DNA of 63,273 nucleotides, filler included, from Octopus bimaculoides (Eukaryota): the NCBI RefSeq assembly GCF_001194135.2. It is 5 parts of 5 records of this genome, joined end to end, with 100 filler letters (N's around TTAATTAATTAA, not from the genome) between each part and the next. Parts side by side here need not be neighbours in the genome. Positions count along the whole stretch, not along the records: positions 5,567 to 21,081 come from NC_069009.1; 4 more parts are not named here. One strand, given 5' to 3'. Below, piece by piece: positions 12,325 through 21,081 of this stretch. Position 1 is the first letter of the stretch. The number at the start of each line of letters is the position of its first letter. The notes beneath the pieces were generated by a model. That model was not told the DNA's origin, did not search any database, and saw only the letters and a list, made by a program, of their open reading frames with translations. The position numbers were made by a program, and so were the translations under genes.

Positions 12325-13135
12325 CCCCCACCACCACTTTACCTCCTGCTGTGTTACTACTGCTACTACGACAACCACCACCACTACTGTCACCATCATT
12401 ACAACTACCACCAGCACCACGTCAAACAACACCGCTACCACCTATACCACTACCAATATTACAACCACCACCACCACCACTACCATTACTACTATCACTA
12501 CTACCACTACCACCACCCCCACTGCCACTGTCACTATTACTACAGCCATCATTACCACCACCACCACCACTGTCAACACCATTATCTCCACCACCATCGT
12601 CACCGCCACCACCACCAACACTACCACTATTATCACCACAACCCCCCGCCACTATCATACCATCACTACCATTTCTGTTACCATTACAGTGTCACCATCA
12701 CGATCACCACTACATCCACCGTTACTACCATGACCACCACAACTATCATTACCATCACCACTACCACCACTGGCATCCCCACCATCACCCGCAATACCTT
12801 CACTTCCATCCCCATCACCACCACCAAACACCTTTACCATCAGCAACATCATCATCACCACCATCATCATCACCACCACCACAACCACTACTACAACCGC
12901 TGTCACCACCACTATCATCATCATCATCCTCACCACAATTACCACCATTTTCACTATCACCTCCATCAACTTCAACACCACGACTCACCACTGCCACTAC
13001 CACCAACACCAACACCTTCAGGAACCGTTACCAGCATCAGCATCAACATTGACTTCCTGTCCCCCCACCGTCACTACAACAACCACACCACTACCGCTGT
13101 AACAGCTATAACCAATAATTCTAGCGACTATACTA
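12325..13135. repeat. Degenerate (ACC/ACT/ATC)n tract
   Basis: Directly visible; produces Thr-, Pro- and His-rich ORFs in three frames. Confidence 0.9.
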
Positions 13136-13319: not shown

Positions 13320-13521
13320 TTGTGTTTGTGTTCCAATCCCACCCACCCCATTTGACAACCTGTGTTGGTTTGCTTACATCCCTGTAATGTAGCAGTTCAG
13401 CTGAAGACACCAATAGAATAAGTACTAAACTTTTAAATGTTTTCTGGTGTCGATTTGTTTGACTGAGCAGTTCAAGGTGGTGCCCCAGCATGACCAGAGT
13501 TCACTGACTAACAAGTAAGAG
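13320..13521 (+). mobile_element. SINE family A, 3' part, diverged
   Basis: ttgacaac..gtaatgtagcagttcagc..atagaataagtact..gtcgatttg..gtgccccagcatgacc..aacaagtaaga. Confidence 0.8.
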
Positions 13522-13610
13522 ATGGAATCTTTAGCCTTACTTGTACACTTCTGTATGCAAGTATGAACATGTGTGTGTGTGTGTGTGGATTTTCCTTATA
13601 TATTAAAAAA

Positions 13611-14693
13611 CACCCATGCTGGTGCCAGATGAAAAGCACCCGGTCCACTTTGTAACGTGGTTGGCATTTAGGAAGGGCATCCAGCTGTAGAAACCATTCC
13701 AAAGCAGACCTCACTGGTGCTGGTGCCGGGTGAAAAGCACTCGGTCCATTCTGTAAAGTGGTTGGCATTAGGAAGGGCATCCAGCTGTAGAACNNNNNNN
13801 NNNNNNNNNNNNNNNNNNNNNNNNNNNNNNNNNNNNNNNNNNNNNNNNNNNNNNNNNNNNNNNNNNNNNNNNNNNNNNNNNNNNNNNNNNNNNNNNNNNN
13901 NNNNNNNNNNNNNNNNNNNNNNNNNNNNNNNNNNNNNNNNNNNNNNNNNNNNNNNNNNNNNNNNNNNNNNNNNNNNNNNNNNNNNNNNNNNNNNNNNNNN
14001 NNNNNNNNNNNNNNNNNNNNNNNNNNNNNNNNNNNNNNNNNNNNNNNNNNNNNNNNNNNNNNNNNNNNNNNNNNNNNNNNNNNNNNNNNNNNNNNNNNNN
14101 NNNNNNNNNNNNNNNNNNNNNNNNNNNNNNNNNNNNNNNNNNNNNNNNNNNNNNNNNNNNNNNNNNNNNNNNNNNNNNNNNNNNNNNNNNNNNNNNNNNN
14201 NNNNNNNNNNNNNNNNNNNNNNNNNNNNNNNNNNNNNNNNNNNNNNNNNNNNNNNNNNNNNNNNNNNNNNNNNNNNNNNNNNNNNNNNNNNNNNNNNNNN
14301 NNNNNNNNNNNNNNNNNNNNNNNNNNNNNNNNNNNNNNNNNNNNNNNNNTTGGCATTAGGAAGGGCATCCAGCTGTAGAAACCATTCCAAAGCAGACCTC
14401 ACTGGTGCTGGTGCTGGGTGAAAAGCACTCGGTCAATTCTGTAAAGTGGTTGGCATTAGGAAGGGCATCCAGCTGTAGAAACCATTCCAAAGCAGACCTC
14501 ACTGGTGCTGGTGCTGGGTGAAAAGCACTCGGTCCATTCTGTAAAGTGGTTGGCATTAGGAAGGGCATCCAGCTGTAGAACCCATGCTTGAACATAGAAC
14601 AGGAGCCTGGTGCAGCTTTCTGGCTCACCAGCTCATGTCAAACTGTCCAACCCATACCAGCATAGAAAACAGATGTTGAATGACAATGATGAT
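13611..14693 (+). repeat. 100-bp tandem array derived from the RTE 3' UTR, ending in the RTE terminus
   Basis: The unit gaaaagcactcggtccattctgtaaagtggttggcattaggaagggcatccagctgtagaaacc... recurs at 13631, 13732, 14420 and 14520. It is homologous to 26044-26293 and ends ccaacccataccagcat..gatgat. Confidence 0.9.
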
Positions 14694-15214
14694 CAGTGAG
14701 CTTGGCCAAAAGTGACCATCTCTTCTGATGGTAACAGGCCACCAGGAAAACTACAAATAGTAGTGCTAATGGTCAGTTTGACCAGAAAGAAGTGACCAGA
14801 TTTGTTGAGAGAAGCGAATGAGAATTCGGTGTGGTGGTGGTGGCGGTGGCGGTAATATCACTTAAGCATTTGTATGTATATTTGCTTCTCTGCATGTGTA
14901 TGTGCGTGCGTGTGTGTTCGTTATATATTAATGGTCATTAGCTTGACCAAAAGTGACCGATGCTTTCTGATTACGTAACAGGCTACCAATAAAATTACAA
15001 TTAGTCTTAATGGTACATTTGTATCTGTGTGTGTTTATGTGTGTGTATTTGTGTATGTATAGATTATTGAATATATGTGTGTGCATATGTCTGTATACAA
15101 ATATGTGTATGTATATATATATTTGTGTGTGTATGCAAATATGTGTATATATATATATATAGAGAGAGAGAGATAGATGTACATGTATATATGTGTGTTT
15201 ATGAATTTGTGTTG

Positions 15215-15254
<40 letters not shown>

Positions 15255-15940
15255 GACATACATATGTATACACACACACATGTGTGCGTTTGTGAGTGTG
15301 TTTGTGTTCAGGCGCCCAATGCTTGATGACCAGTGTTAGTTTGTTTACAACCCCCTGTGTTTCTTGAGTGTGGCAGGTGAGGTGGCAGTGTTGATGGTCA
15401 TTTCGGCCACTTAGAAGTGACCGATAGATATGTGGTGGCAGTATTGCTCATTAGTTTGTCCACATATTTGCCTTTCTGCATGTGTATGGGAGTGTGTGTT
15501 CTTTATATTCTAGTGGTCAGTTTGCTTGACCATTAGTGTCCATGGATTTACTGGACTTAAAAATCAATCAAGATTTAATTAGGGGATTTTTTCTCTCTCT
15601 TTGCAGCTCCTTTTTCTTTTTATCTTTTATCTCCATGTGTCGGTCAGTTTGACCAGAAGAAACTGACTGCAATGGCAATAGTATTAGCGGTGGTGTGGGT
15701 GGTGGGGATCGTGATTGTGGTGTTGGCATTGGTACTGGCGGTGGTGGTGTTGCTGTTAATGGTAATAATATTAATATTGCTGTTGGTCAGTTTGACCACA
15801 GCAACATTGGTGGTGGTGGTGGTGACAGTAGTGCTAAAGTTAATGTTGTTGTTGCTAATATTAAAGATATTGTCTGTGGTGGTGAACTGTTAGAATTGTT
15901 ATCATGCCAGGCAAAAGGCTTATCAATATTTTATCTGTTT

Positions 15941-16085
15941 TTATGTTCAAATTCCACCGAGGTCGACTTTGCCTTTCATCTTTTCTGGGTCGATAAATCA
16001 AGTACCAGTTCAGTACTGGGGTCGATGTGATCAACTGTCCCCCTCTCCACAAAATCCAGGCCTTGTGCCAATGGTAGAAAGGATG
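15941..16085 (+). mobile_element. SINE family B, 5'-truncated
   Basis: gttcaaattcc B-box, gtcgactttgcctttcatc, aagtaccagtt..tactggggtcgatgt. Homologous to 51393-51610. Confidence 0.85.
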
Positions 16086-16271
16086 AGAGAACAGTGCATG
16101 CAATCAAAGTGACACTGACGAAAGAGCAAAACTCCTGAAATATGGCATATACTCCCATTATCCTTTTTTCATCTCTGAATCTCATTGTTGTCTTGTATCC
16201 GAAACATCCTTACAGAATCAGTGCTGGCTATAATTCCTGTAGAGAATCTGCAGAGATAACGTTAACGAATA

Positions 16272-16422
16272 CTGTGAAGTGGTTGGCATTAGGAAAGGCG
16301 TCTAGCTGTAGAAACCATGCCAAAGCAGACACTGGAGCACGATACAGTCCTTTGGCCCATTGGATCCTGTCAAACCAACCCACCCATACCAGCATGGAAC
16401 ACGGATGTTAAATGATGATGAT
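16272..16422 (+). mobile_element. RTE LINE 3' terminus
   Basis: gtggttggcattaggaaaggc..tagctgtagaaacc..cccataccagcatggaa..gatgttaaatgatgatgatg. Homologous to the 13611 and 26044 copies. Confidence 0.85.
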
Positions 16423-17199
16423 GGTCAGCTTGACCACTAGGAATTGGTTACATTAATGATGATGGTGATGATAGTGTTGTCACTTTCATTTTCCTGTTTG
16501 CTAAGTCATTATCTCTGTTTCGCTGCTCTCACATTATCAGTGGTCAGTTTGAGCAGAGAGTAATGTGGCTTAATATTGATGGTCAGTTTGACCACATGAG
16601 TGGCATTACTCTTAGTGGCCAGTTTCTATCTCCAACACATGGAGATAGTGTAGATGCTAGTATTGGCATTAGTTTGACCTAAGGGAACTGACCAATAGGT
16701 TGAGTCATGGTGTTGTTGACCAAATAGAAGTGACCAGTAATTAAATGGTTTTGATAGTACTGACGGTCATTTTGGACATGTAAAACTGACCAATATATTG
16801 ATGGTAGGGATGGTGCTGATAAAATTGGTATTGGTCAGTTTGACCACAGAGTAGAGACCAATAATTTTATGGTTGTATTGATGGTCATCTTGGACACATA
16901 AAACTGACCAATATATTGATAATGAGGAATATGTTGATCCTAGTGGTGTGGGTTAGTTTGACCGCTGAGAAGCAACCATTTATTTGGTAATGGCAATATT
17001 TTCAATTGGTGGTGTTGCTGGTTACTCTTGCCATAGAGAAGTCACCAATAATTTGGTAATGGTTATAATATTCTTTGTGATGTTAGTGGTCAGTTTGGCT
17101 TCATACATGGTGTTCGTGGTCAACTTTTACATCATATTTTGTGATTATGGTCCAACGAACCATTTGTGCTACCAATTTATACCATCAATGATGCCACCA

Positions 17200-18180
17200 T
17201 CATTACCACTGATTGTCTGACCATTGTCTGGTCAACTGCCACCACACCCATTGTTGTTGCTATTAGTGACACCATCATCATCATCATCGGTTTAATTACA
17301 ATCACTATAGCTACAGTTACTGCCACCACTACCACCACCATCATCATCATTATCCTCATCTCTATGATCATCATCACCACCATCATCATCATCATCATCA
17401 CTGCCATCATTCTTACCACCATTACCATCATCATCATCATCACTATTAGTATCATCATCATCATTGCCACCACCTTCGTCAGCATCACCACTACCACCAG
17501 TCTCACCTCTGTCATCCACCACCATACACCACCATCACCACCACCACCATCACCACCACCACCACCACCACCACCACCACCACCATATCCACCACTACTA
17601 CCGTCAACAACAATACATCCACTACCACCACTACCACTACTACTGCCACCACCACAACTACTCCCATTTCCACTGCAACCGCAACCACTACTACCAACAC
17701 CACAACTACTACCACCACCACCACCACCACAACTACCATCACTACTACCACTATTAGCACCATCATTATAACTACCACCACTACCATCACAACTACCATC
17801 ACTACTACCACTATTATCACCATCATTATAACTACCACCACCACCACCACAACTACCATCACTACTACCACTATTACCACCATCATTATAACTACCACCA
17901 CTNNNNNNNNNNNNNNNNNNNNNNNNNNNTCACCATCATTATAACTACCACCACCACCACCACAACTACCATCACTACTACCACTATTACCACCATCATT
18001 ATAACTACCACCACTACCATCACAACTACCACTACTATCATCATTACAGCAACCACATCTATCACTACCACCAAGACAACCATCATATTCACTGCCACCA
18101 ACACTACAACCATAACCACTACCAGCAGCACCACAGCAATCGTCCCCAACCCCACCATGACCATCACTCGAGGCTCCATC
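17200..18180. repeat. Degenerate (CAT/CAC/ACT)n trinucleotide tract
   Basis: Directly visible. Confidence 0.95.
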
Positions 18181-18302
18181 AATTAATTATACATTGTGAC
18201 TAATTCTCTCACGTAAATTGATTTCGTCGCTTTTGCTTGGCTGTGTAGTATAATTGTTTTTGTCTGTCTTTATGTATGTATGCCTGTATGACTGTGTGTC
18301 TG

Positions 18303-18351
<49 letters not shown>

Positions 18352-18499
18352 GTGTGTGTGTGTGTTTGTATACGTGTATGTCTGTTGATCTCTCTGTATG
18401 TAGGTGTGTATGTATGTATGCATTATGTATGGATGTATGCATATATATGAATATATGTGTGTGTGTGTGTGTGTGTGTATGTATTTATTTGTGTGTATC

Positions 18500-18676
18500 A
18501 TTGTGTCTCTGTCCCCCTACCACCGCTTGACAAGTATTGTTGGTGTGTTTATGTCTCCATAACTTAGTGGTTCAGCAAATAGACCAATAAGATAAGTACT
18601 AGGCCTAAAAAGATTAAGTCCTATGGTCGATTTGTTCAACTCCATAGCTGCAGTCAAATGATTGAAACAAGTAAAA
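18500..18676 (+). mobile_element. SINE family A, 3' part
   Basis: cgcttgacaa..taacttagtggttcagcaaa..ataagtactaggc..gcagtcaaatgattgaaacaagtaaaa. Confidence 0.85.
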
Positions 18677-19175: not shown

Positions 19176-19326
19176 ATGTGTGTCTGTGTTTGTCCCCCAA
19201 CATCACTTGACAACTGATGCTGGTGTGTTTACGCGCCTGTAACTTAGCGGTTCGGCAAAAGAGACCGATAGAATAAGGACTAGGCTTACAAAGAATAAGT
19301 CCTGGGGTCGATTTGCTCGACTAAAA
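19176..19326 (+). mobile_element. SINE family A, 3' part, tail truncated
   Basis: Close match to 6530-6685. Confidence 0.9.
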
Positions 19327-19329
19327 GAG

Positions 19330-19999
19330 TAATACTGCCACTCCTACGATCACCAATACCACCTCCACTATCACCGCCACTGCTACCATACTGACCACCA
19401 CTACTAATAATGGTAGCACAGCCTCGATACTATCACAGCACCTTCCCACTATCACCGATACTATCCTACAAGCAGCATTATCATCACCACTGTCGCTATC
19501 ACCAATACTGCAACCCAAAGTACTACTGTTACTAATACTACCACCACAACCATTACCAAAACAACCTCCACCATCACCACCACTGACCTTCCCCTCCACT
19601 ACTACCACGACTAACACCAATGCCAGTACAGTTACCAGCATGGCTACTACTGTAACCAATACAATCATGATCACTGCCACCATTACCACCATAACTACCA
19701 CCAACACCACCATCATAAATACCACCACCACAACTACTACCACCAATACCACCATCACTATCAGTACTGCTACTACAACCACCACTGCCGCAACCAACGT
19801 CACCGCCACCCACTACCACCACCACAACTACCACCACCATCATAACTACCACCACAACTACCACAGCTACAGCTATCACCACCACAGCCACTACGGCTGC
19901 CACCACTGCTGCAACTACTGTAATAACAATCTCCACAACAACGACAGCCACTATCGCCACAACCATCACCACTACCACCACCACCACCACCACCACCAC
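19330..19999. repeat. Degenerate (ACT/ACC/CAC)n tract
   Basis: Directly visible. Confidence 0.9.
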
Positions 20000-20611
20000 N
20001 NNNNNNNNNNNNNNNNNNNNNNNNNNNNNNNNNNNNNNNNNNNNNNNNNNNNTACAAAAAGGTATTACCTACTTAAGACACAAATCACTGGTTAGGCTAA
20101 CATCGTTCTTGGGTCTCTAACCTGTTATTTTCTTGTCCTCTAATTTTTTTAGGGATTTTTCAGTATGTGCTCCTTCTCCCTCTGCCATGACCCTACAATT
20201 TAGGGCCCACTTACTGCAGATAGCTCCCCTATATATGATATACCATTGTGTCTGTGTGTGTGTGTGTGTGTGTGTGGATGGGTGTATAGCTGTGTGGATG
20301 GGTGTGTGTGTGTGTGTGTATGTGTATGTAAGTGTTTTGGTGTGTATATATGTGGGTATATATATCTGTATATATTTATGCACACACACACCCAATAATG
20401 TGTATATATATACATATACACAAAAACACATGTGTTTGTGTATATACATGTATGTATGTATGTTTGTCTGTGTGCATATATATATGTGCATCTGTGTATA
20501 TATGCATGTATATATGTGTGTATATATGTATATATTTTATGTGCATATATATATAATATATATATATGATACATTTGTGTGTATTTACATATATGTATGT
20601 TCATGTATGTT

Positions 20612-20652
<41 letters not shown>

Positions 20653-20966
20653 NNNNNNNNNNGTGTGTGTGTGTATGTGTATGTAAGTGTTTTGGTGTGT
20701 ATATATGTGGGTATATATATCTGTATATATTTATGCACACACACACCCAATAATGTGTATATATATACATATACACAAAAACACATGTGTTTGTGTATAT
20801 ACATGTATGTATGTATGTTTGTCTGTGTGCATATATATATGTGCATCTGTGTATATATGCATGTATATATGTGTGTATATATGTATATATTTTATGTGCA
20901 TATATATATAATATATATATATGATACATTTGTGTGTATTTACATATATGTATGTTCATGTATGTT

Positions 20967-21031
<65 letters not shown>

Positions 21032-21081
21032 GTATGTACGTATATATACATATATAATTTGTGTGTGTTTGTGTATGTATT

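What the first reader, a model, noticed from the sequence alone, without database searches (positions are those of the whole stretch)
14694..17240. Decayed minisatellite whose unit carries a perfect estrogen-response-element core palindrome (GGTCAnnnTGACC)
Seen: six perfect copies (14771, 15642, 15785, 16423, 16581, 16833) and about nine variants, often followed about 9 bp later by a third TGACC half-site. Spacing is about 68 bp distally, and there are higher-order duplications (14694-14775 resembles 14930-15015; 14875-14945 resembles 15460-15535). The spacers have drifted far more than the palindrome. Rough estimate assuming about 35% GC: about 0.02 chance hits per window, although tandem copies are not independent. 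Established: GGTCAnnnTGACC is the IR3 element bound by estrogen receptors, and mollusc ER orthologues, including that of Octopus vulgaris, are reported as ligand-independent activators at such elements. Inference: a repeat-built homotypic nuclear-receptor enhancer or binding sink. Caveat: the flanking base is T, not the optimal A of AGGTCA.
Basis: partly seen in the sequence, partly recalled or inferred. Interest (0 to 1): 0.75.

Follow-up and report, generated by a model that had tools for sequence, protein, structure and literature searches.

The report
Decayed minisatellite carrying ERE-like palindromes
This is an old tandem repeat, broken up by transposon insertions, whose unit happens to contain an estrogen-receptor-type palindrome; the six perfect sites are copies of one ancestral sequence, and nothing in the sequence shows they are kept for receptor binding.

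Summary
There are six perfect GGTCAnnnTGACC cores at the stated coordinates, against 0.02 expected. There are about a dozen degenerate copies, a third TGACC 9 nt downstream in many units, 50-69 bp spacing at the distal end, and both higher-order duplications.

The family is confined to 14691-17100 and lies on the + strand only. It is a decayed minisatellite, too diverged for Tandem Repeats Finder. Three blocks interrupt it: two of SINE-like sequence and one of microsatellite.

The functional reading gains no support from the sequence:
- The six sites share one origin. Five have the identical non-contact spacer GTT, and the real core is TGGTCAGTTTGACCA.
- When units are defined without reference to the palindrome, its 10 positions are 0.81-0.83 conserved. 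The adjacent block scores 0.81-0.87.
- The apparent excess of conservation comes from picking units by the motif, and from spacers that are slippage-prone period-3 simple sequence.
- The two arms mutate independently. About half the units have lost critical bases or the 3-nt spacing.

Receptor binding in vitro remains plausible but cannot be tested here. No cephalopod sequence could be reached with these tools, so genome-wide and orthologue tests are still open. My verdict is an ordinary repeat, of low interest.

The parts
14691..17100 (+). Whole interrupted minisatellite. It has about 20 units with consensus core TGGTCAGTTTGACCA-CAGAGAAG-TGACCAAT, followed by a variable tail of simple sequence.
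   Evidence: nhmmer with a profile built from the units finds significant copies only in 14696-17060, all on the + strand. Repeat families D7, D8 and D10 cover the same units.
14771..14783 (.). Perfect core GGTCAGTTTGACC, flanked by T and A, with an exact third TGACC at 14793.
15642..15654 (.). Perfect core GGTCAGTTTGACC. Its 5' flank is C, and the third half-site is degenerate (CTGACT).
15785..15797 (.). Perfect core GGTCAGTTTGACC. The downstream block has been replaced by (GGT)n-like simple sequence.
16423..16435 (.). Perfect core with spacer GCT (GGTCAGCTTGACC). It directly follows the (GAT)n end of a SINE-like element.
16581..16593 (.). Perfect core GGTCAGTTTGACC. It lies 39 nt after the one-mismatch copy at 16542.
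16833..16845 (.). Perfect core GGTCAGTTTGACC, the only perfect copy inside the regular tandem block.
14691..15022 (+). Proximal higher-order repeat of about 240 bp. It contains one full copy and one copy truncated at 15022, inside a core (GGTACATTTG|).
   Evidence: Alignment of 14686-14785 with 14926-15022 gives about 80% identity.
15382..15545 (+). A further partial copy of the higher-order repeat. It has units at 15396, 15446 and 15515; the last has spacer GTTTGCT (7 nt).
   Evidence: Alignment of 14846-14960 with 15432-15545.
13541..13606 (+). Detached left part of a higher-order unit (CATGTGTG...TTATATATTAA). A SINE-like insertion separates it from unit 14691.
   Evidence: 13568-13606 matches 14893-14931 at 82% (family D13).
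13607..14690 (+). SINE-like element 'Y' with an internal 100-bp tandem duplication and an assembly gap. It ends in (GAT)n, which abuts the first unit.
   Evidence: TRF reports period 100 at 98%. The second copy lies at 16268-16428 and is 76-90% identical.
15020..15365 (+). Interruption made of TG/TA microsatellites plus a fragment of about 60 nt of the interspersed element 'X'.
   Evidence: TRF rows; alignment with four other X copies.
15640..15895 (+). Long-unit part of the array (spacing 143 bp). The spacers are period-3 (NNT)n simple sequence.
   Evidence: Period-3 self-match is 0.45 against a background of 0.26. T content by phase in 15770-15895 is 0.07, 0.33 and 0.69.
15895..16420 (+). 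Interruption of non-array sequence: unidentified sequence followed by the second Y copy at 16268-16420.
   Evidence: This block has no period-3 signal and no unit hits.
16667..17110 (+). Regular tandem block of eight units spaced 42-69 bp apart, including a 118-bp higher-order pair (16749-16866 and 16867-16984, 75% identical).
   Evidence: families D8, D17.
17205..17250 (-). One inverted partial unit at the right edge. Here the strand composition flips from GGT-rich to ACC-rich.
   Evidence: Minus-strand matches ACTGCCACCACACC, CTGACCATT and TCTGGTCAA to unit flanks and cores. All are short, with E-values of 0.02-1.4.

Best explanation
This is a neutrally decaying minisatellite.

Origin. An ancestral unit of about 68 bp happened to contain the 15-bp palindrome TGGTCAGTTTGACCA and a third TGACCA. 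Slippage or unequal exchange amplified it into an array, later with 118-bp and roughly 240-bp higher-order units.

Decay. Since then the array has collected point substitutions and small indels inside the palindrome. Its simple-sequence tails have expanded by slippage. Two blocks of SINE-like sequence and a microsatellite block now interrupt it.

The six perfect ERE cores are surviving copies of one ancestral sequence. They are not six sites held in place by selection.

Shown: the anatomy of the array, its single orientation, equal conservation of the palindrome and its neighbouring block, conservation of the spacer, absence of arm co-variation, and the interruptions. Inferred: the amplification mechanism and neutrality.
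For: 1. All significant copies lie in 14696-17060 on one strand. The distal spacing is regular and there are higher-order copies.
2. Five of the six perfect sites share the spacer GTT and the T/A flanks, so the conserved word is 15 nt long rather than 5+5.
3. When units are chosen without reference to the motif, the palindrome scores 0.81-0.83 and the best downstream windows score 0.81-0.87. It ranks 2nd and 5th of 32 windows. Only the motif-anchored set gives 0.88 against about 0.63.
4. The spacers are cryptically simple with period 3: self-match is 0.36-0.51, against 0.21-0.30 in the core and 0.26 background. They therefore turn over by slippage, and gapless comparison understates their homology.
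5. The arms mutate independently: 85.6% of cells are paired, against a shuffled mean of 84.8%, and 202 of 500 shuffles do as well.
6. Changes hit critical bases: GGTTA in two units, GGTGT, TGGAC in two units, TGAGC, TTGCC, CGGCC. Three units have 6-8 nt spacers.
7. Interspersed-repeat and microsatellite sequence interrupts the array.
8. The piece contains no detectable coding, tRNA or curated RNA feature.
Against: Six of about 18-20 units remain perfect at all 10 positions. If the per-site identity of the downstream block (0.77-0.79) applied uniformly, 1.3-1.7 perfect units would be expected (P = 0.001-0.005).

Three perfect copies (15785, 16423, 16581) sit next to badly diverged downstream sequence.

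Ascertainment, differences in unit age, gene conversion and slippage in the spacers can account for this, but they are not proven here.

No comparison with other genomic copies or with orthologous loci was possible.
Confidence: 0.7

Rival explanations
1. The array derives from a mobile element. Its unit would be part of the 3' tail of the SINE-like element Y, or a subterminal repeat of a DNA transposon, later expanded in place. The palindrome would then be a feature of the transposon.
For: The window holds two loci of element Y, and both end in (GAT)n directly against the 5' side of a palindrome copy (14691 and 16423). The Y-Y alignment runs into the first half-site (q14536-14696 against s16269-16428, 75.8%). 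Both of these copies share the GCTTG variant.
Against: The sequence just left of Y copy 1 (13568-13606) matches the sequence that directly precedes an uninterrupted unit at 14932. That pattern fits Y inserting into an existing unit.

The array has no bounding terminal inverted repeats and no clear target-site duplication.

The unit occurs nowhere else in the 15.5-kb piece, although element X occurs at least six times.

The left flank of the unit is itself GAT-like, so the abutment could come from tail microhomology during target-primed insertion. That is inference.
Confidence: 0.15
2. The array is a homotypic binding platform, acting as enhancer or sink, for the constitutively active mollusc estrogen receptor or a related nuclear receptor. 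Selection would then keep a subset of the palindromes perfect.
For: - There are six perfect 13-bp ERE cores in 2.1 kb, plus near-perfect ones.
- A mollusc ER DNA-binding domain binds GGTCAnnnTGACC without ligand and activates constitutively (PMC3778743, which also cites Keay et al. 2006 for Octopus vulgaris).
- In human cells about a third of ER-alpha-bound EREs lie in repeats, and some of those act as enhancers (PMC2853111).
- There are more perfect copies than uniform decay predicts.
Against: - The palindrome is not better conserved than the adjacent block in units sampled without bias.
- The non-contact spacer is conserved, and it is GTT rather than the C(A/T)G favoured at genuine ER-alpha targets.
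- The outer flanks are T/A rather than A/T.
- There is no arm co-variation.
- Half the units are disabled at critical bases or by altered spacing.
- Insertions interrupt the array.
- No chromatin, expression or orthologue data are available.
Confidence: 0.08
3. The palindrome is kept as a DNA hairpin or cruciform, or as the site of some other dimeric protein that reads all 15 bp. It would promote recombination or slippage within the array.
For: The 15-mer folds as a 6-bp stem with a 3-nt loop at -4.7 kcal/mol, z = -2.8 against shuffles. The spacer is conserved along with the arms.
Against: The stem is short and weak. The arms show no compensatory changes. Whole units do not fold better than shuffles (z = -1.7 and -0.2).
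Confidence: 0.04

Closest known systems
EREs carried by repeats in mammals (Alu and other repeats bound by ER-alpha; Mason et al. 2010, PMC2853111)
   Same: A palindromic ERE core is multiplied because it sits inside a repeated sequence. Such sites can bind the receptor and sometimes act as enhancers.
   Different: Here the carrier is a local tandem array, not a dispersed retroposon. No binding or activity data exist. The spacer is GTT, not the C(A/T)G enriched at bound human sites.
Ordinary decayed minisatellites with higher-order structure
   Same: Units of 50-69 bp lie head to tail in one orientation. Higher-order units are 118 bp and about 240 bp. Unit-to-consensus identity is about 75-80%. 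Transposons and microsatellites interrupt the array.
   Different: Nothing essential differs. The only unusual feature is that the unit's complex core happens to match a well-known transcription-factor palindrome.
Consensus vertebrate ERE, AGGTCAnnnTGACCT (from general knowledge; the core is quoted in PMC3778743)
   Same: The 13-bp core GGTCAnnnTGACC is identical in six copies.
   Different: The outer positions are T...A rather than A...T. The spacer is fixed, not free. The sites are paralogous copies of one another.
Tandem repeat rich in TGACC/GGTCA on metagenome contig L007 (Ga0265306_10149500)
   Same: An AT-rich contig that looks eukaryotic carries a 132-bp tandem repeat. Each of its two full units contains ATGGTCAGTTTGACCAC plus several further half-sites.
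   Different: There is no similarity beyond that 17-mer. The unit length and remaining sequence differ, and the source organism is unknown. The match may be coincidence or convergence.

Membership tests
Minisatellite (tandem array of 10-100 bp units) | Head-to-tail copies of one unit, all in the same orientation | tested here: met
   Seventeen significant profile hits, all on the + strand within 14696-17060. Spacings are 42-69 bp in 16667-17110.
Minisatellite (tandem array of 10-100 bp units) | Detected as an array by a standard tandem-repeat finder | tested here: not met
   TRF at minimum score 30 lists no array of period about 68 in 16480-17270. This fits its stated limit of about 70% identity between copies, so the array is decayed.
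Minisatellite (tandem array of 10-100 bp units) | Higher-order repeat structure | tested here: met
   A 118-nt pair at 75% identity (family D17) and roughly 240-bp units.
Functional estrogen response element / ER-bound enhancer | IR3 palindrome GGTCAnnnTGACC | tested here: met
   Six exact copies.
Functional estrogen response element / ER-bound enhancer | Extended consensus flanks, A at -1 and T at +14 (AGGTCA...TGACCT) | tested here: not met
   All six perfect copies have T or C upstream and A downstream.
Functional estrogen response element / ER-bound enhancer | Contact positions conserved more than non-contact positions (spacer and neighbouring sequence) | tested here: not met
   In unbiased unit sets the palindrome scores 0.81-0.83 and the best downstream windows 0.81-0.87. 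Spacer identities are 0.67, 0.80 and 0.93. The result rests on only 8-9 units, so power is low.
Functional estrogen response element / ER-bound enhancer | Receptor occupancy, open chromatin and half-site-dependent reporter activity | not testable with these tools
   No functional genomic data are available. Only in-vitro binding of a snail ER to the core is documented.
Functional estrogen response element / ER-bound enhancer | Conservation of the sites at orthologous loci | not testable with these tools
   No cephalopod DNA could be reached. Scans of viral, genome and metagenome contigs and the protein look-ups returned nothing related.
Transposon terminus or tail repeat | The unit recurs at the end of an interspersed element in independent copies | tested here: inconclusive
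   Both Y loci abut a palindrome copy. There are only two loci, and the flank evidence favours insertion into a pre-existing unit.
Transposon terminus or tail repeat | Bounding terminal inverted repeats or target-site duplication; dispersed copies elsewhere | tested here: not met
   No convincing inverted termini were found. No unit copies lie outside 14691-17100 in the piece.
Protein-coding repeat | Open frame, unit length a multiple of 3, recognisable domain | tested here: not met
   Unit lengths are 50, 56, 68 and 69 bp. The core carries TGA in one frame. The ORFs are low-complexity and match no Pfam family.
Selected hairpin or structured element | Compensatory changes that keep the arms complementary | tested here: not met
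   The covariation score is 0.167, against a shuffled mean of 0.170; only one cell has a change on both sides.

The most novel reading that the evidence does not exclude
The array is a dense platform of perfect and near-perfect EREs built by tandem duplication. The ligand-independent cephalopod estrogen receptor, or another nuclear receptor that reads GGTCA half-sites, occupies it in vivo, and it acts as an enhancer or as a titrating sink. That would be a minisatellite serving as a nuclear-receptor regulatory element in an invertebrate.
Probability: 0.07. Interest if true: 0.6.

Novelty: new member of a known kind. Interest (0 to 1): 0.18.

Why it matters
As it stands the finding matters little. 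Any repeat family amplifies whatever short motif its founder unit carried, so a cluster of perfect transcription-factor sites inside a tandem repeat is not evidence of function.

If receptor occupancy were shown, the locus would be a natural example of a regulatory element created in one step by repeat expansion. It would also give a concrete genomic target for the mollusc ER, whose target sites in mollusc genomes are still described as unknown (PMC3778743).

Tried and rejected
- **Collection scans for related DNA.** The unit pattern found nothing in viral contigs. One search used a wrong gap of 9 nt, corrected. In metagenome contigs it found 8 loci. Seven are single hits in GC-rich contigs that look like chance, and one (L007) is an unrelated AT-rich tandem repeat.
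- **Element Y 3'-end pattern.** No match in viral or prokaryotic genome contigs.
- **Protein route to orthologous or paralogous loci.** Three searches with window ORFs or repeat translations found nothing. Two exact look-ups also failed.
- **Organism identity.** I could not confirm the source organism. It fits my recollection of octopod SINE sequences but was not tested.
- **Literature string searches.** The core and the interspersed-repeat sequences matched no paper. No open paper links minisatellites with EREs.
- **Rfam.** Only sub-threshold matches to microRNA families, caused by TG/TA microsatellites.
- **tRNA and Pfam.** No tRNA and no Pfam family.
- **Coding reading.** Rejected because unit lengths are not multiples of 3 and the ORFs are low-complexity.
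- **Assembly artefact as the source of the perfect copies.** Rejected. 14350-17902 has no gap and every perfect copy has different flanks.
- **Terminal inverted repeats around the array.** None found.
Full report
**What is there**

The pattern GGTCANNNTGACC occurs exactly six times, at 14771, 15642, 15785, 16423, 16581 and 16833, and nowhere else in the piece. Dinucleotide shuffles give a mean of 0.02, and none of 100 reached six. Base composition gives 0.007 for the piece.

Allowing two mismatches adds 15396, 16542, 16709, 16765, 16883, 16951 and 17088. Reading the units adds copies with three mismatches or a longer spacer at 14691, 14933, 15515, 16667 and 17020, and a truncated one at 15012.

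A third TGACC starts 9 nt after the core in six units and is recognisable but mutated in four more. Distal spacings are 56, 68, 50, 68 and 69 bp.

**Anatomy**

A profile built from nine units finds significant matches only between 14696 and 17060, all on the + strand. The rest of the 15.5-kb piece gives nothing better than E about 1.

The consensus core is TGGTCAGTTTGACCA CAGAGAAG TGACCAAT AATTT, followed by a variable tail. The array has three parts:
- A proximal part with a higher-order unit of about 240 bp (14691-15022 and 15382-15545).
- A middle part with long units of 113-143 bp (15640-15895 and 16421-16666).
- A regular distal block of eight units (16667-17110), which includes a 118-bp higher-order pair at 75% identity (family D17).

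Tandem Repeats Finder does not report the array, which fits copies being near or below its identity limit of about 70%.

At the right edge (17205-17250) there is one inverted partial unit, supported only by short matches, and the strand composition flips from GGT-rich to ACC-rich.

The stretch 14350-17902 contains no assembly gap. The perfect copies have different flanks and are not scaffold artefacts.

**Interruptions**

- A SINE-like element, which I call Y, lies at 13607-14690 and has an internal 100-bp tandem duplication. It sits between a detached left piece of a higher-order unit (13541-13606, which matches 14893-14931 at 82%) and the unit at 14691.
- TG/TA microsatellites and a fragment of a second interspersed element, X, fill 15020-15365 and cut a core after GGTACATTTG. 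X has at least six copies in the piece.
- A block of non-array sequence at 15895-16420 ends with a second Y copy at 16268-16420.

If these blocks are insertions, as the flank match at 13568-13606 suggests for the first, the array predates them.

**Is the palindrome specially conserved?**

| Unit set | Palindrome (10 positions) | Comparison |
|---|---|---|
| 15 units anchored on the motif, in register | 0.88 | downstream windows about 0.63 |
| 8 units of the periodic block, chosen without the motif | 0.81, rank 2 of 32 windows | best non-overlapping downstream window 0.81 |
| 9 units anchored on the downstream 21-nt block | 0.83, rank 5 of 32 windows | best downstream windows up to 0.87 |

All three rows are; the raw anchoring is. 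The first set is selected by the motif itself, so its excess is expected.

The three spacer positions, which the receptor does not read, are conserved at 0.67, 0.80 and 0.93. Five of the six perfect sites have the same GTT. So the conserved word is the whole 15-mer, as expected from common descent.

The two arms do not co-vary. Of all cells, 85.6% are paired, against a shuffled mean of 84.8%, and 202 of 500 shuffles do as well.

The mutations present hit bases critical for a half-site: GGTTA in two units, GGTGT, TGGAC in two units, TGAGC, TTGCC and CGGCC. Three units have 6-8 nt spacers.

**Why the spacers look more drifted**

The stretches between cores are cryptically simple with a 3-nt period. 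Their self-match at lag 3 is 0.36-0.39 around cores and 0.45 in 15640-15895. The core scores 0.21-0.30 and ordinary sequence 0.26. T content by phase reaches 0.07, 0.33 and 0.69.

They resemble the large (GGT/GAT)n and inverted (ACC/ATC)n blocks that fill the rest of the piece. Such sequence changes by slippage and indels far faster than by substitution. That inference explains the poor gapless alignment of the spacers without invoking selection on the core.

**What speaks the other way**

If the per-site identity of the downstream block (0.77-0.79) applied uniformly to 18 independent units, only 1.3-1.7 would keep all ten positions. Six do (P = 0.001-0.005).

Three perfect copies (15785, 16423, 16581) have badly diverged downstream blocks.

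The units are neither independent nor of equal age. They were partly found through the motif, and gene conversion is possible. I therefore do not read this as selection, but it keeps the functional reading alive at a low level.

**Function**

A snail ER DNA-binding domain binds GGTCAnnnTGACC without ligand and activates constitutively. That paper also cites the Octopus vulgaris result and notes that the positions of EREs in mollusc genomes are unknown (PMC3778743).

In human cells about a third of bound EREs lie in repeats, and some of those act as enhancers. Bound sites there favour a C(A/T)G spacer (PMC2853111). The spacer here is GTT and the outer flanks are T/A.

In-vitro binding to the six perfect sites is therefore plausible, which is inference. 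Nothing in the sequence indicates a maintained function.

As single-stranded DNA the 15-mer forms a weak hairpin of -4.7 kcal/mol. That might favour slippage, but there is no compensatory evidence for it.

**An open point**

Both Y loci in the window end in (GAT)n directly against the 5' side of a palindrome copy, and both of those copies have the GCTTG variant.

Flank evidence favours Y inserting into an existing unit, possibly through microhomology between its (GAT)n tail and the GAT-like left flank of the unit. That last step is inference. Two loci cannot exclude that the unit belongs to the tail of the element.

**Limits**

No cephalopod sequence could be reached:
- Scans of viral, prokaryotic and metagenome collections gave nothing related.
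- Protein searches and exact look-ups gave nothing.
- Literature string searches gave nothing.

The source organism is not verified by any tool. No coding, tRNA or curated RNA feature is present.

**Verdict**

This is a decayed, interrupted minisatellite whose founder unit carried an ERE-like palindrome. The description is confirmed and the functional inference is unsupported. It is an ordinary kind of sequence, and a modest candidate for a binding experiment.

Noticed in passing
window 13607-14690 and 16268-16428: The window holds two loci of a SINE-like element (Y). Both end in (GAT)n exactly at the 5' edge of a palindrome copy, GATCAGTGAGCTTGGCCA at one and GGTCAGCTTGACCA at the other. This could be target preference, tail microhomology, co-duplication, or the motif belonging to the element's tail.
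   Followed up: partly
window 13617-14585: Element Y carries an internal 100-bp unit repeated at least 4.4 times at 98% identity on both sides of a 556-N gap. It may be a satellite derived from the SINE, or partly an assembly effect.
   Followed up: partly
window gaps 11015-11232 and 20653-20662 (also 13794-14349 and 17903-17929): Sequence on the two sides of two gaps is 100% identical over 172 nt and 345 nt. It is 94% and 88% identical at the other two gaps. This looks like scaffold gap-edge duplication. The '355-bp x 2' repeat at 20307-21007 and part of the (TGATGA)n block are probably artefacts.
   Followed up: yes
window 5924-5978, 6566-6729, 9137-9278 (-), 9317-9483, 13330-13540, 15285-15365, 18527-18601, 19204-19322: An interspersed element of about 200 nt (X) with a TG-rich head occurs at least seven times in 15.5 kb at about 70-77% identity. 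The piece is saturated with short retroposon-like repeats.
   Followed up: partly
window 8242-8858, 10321-11409, 12374-13016, 17160-18124, 19540-19999: Large blocks of degenerate trinucleotide-type repeats alternate in orientation: (GGT/GTA/GAT)n on +, and (ACC/ATC)n, which is the same repeat inverted. TRF periods are all multiples of 3. The long ORFs across them are low-complexity artefacts with no Pfam match.
   Followed up: partly
L007 1-1225 (Ga0265306_10149500): This AT-rich metagenome contig looks eukaryotic. It has a 132-bp tandem repeat whose units contain ATGGTCAGTTTGACCAC followed by TTGACCTTTGACC and GGTCA..AAGGTCA. It also carries other tandem repeats. It shows no further similarity to the window.
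   Followed up: partly
window 15093-15281, 18268-18422, 20302-21051: Rfam matches to mir-297, mir-466 and similar families score 30-52 bits, against gathering scores of 85-101. They fall on TG/TA microsatellites and are not microRNA genes.
   Followed up: yes
window 9625-9762: A separate 42-bp tandem repeat of 3.2 copies at 78% identity (TGAGGCCCAACACTTGAAAGGAACTCAGCCACTTTGCCTCCA), unrelated to the finding.
   Followed up: no
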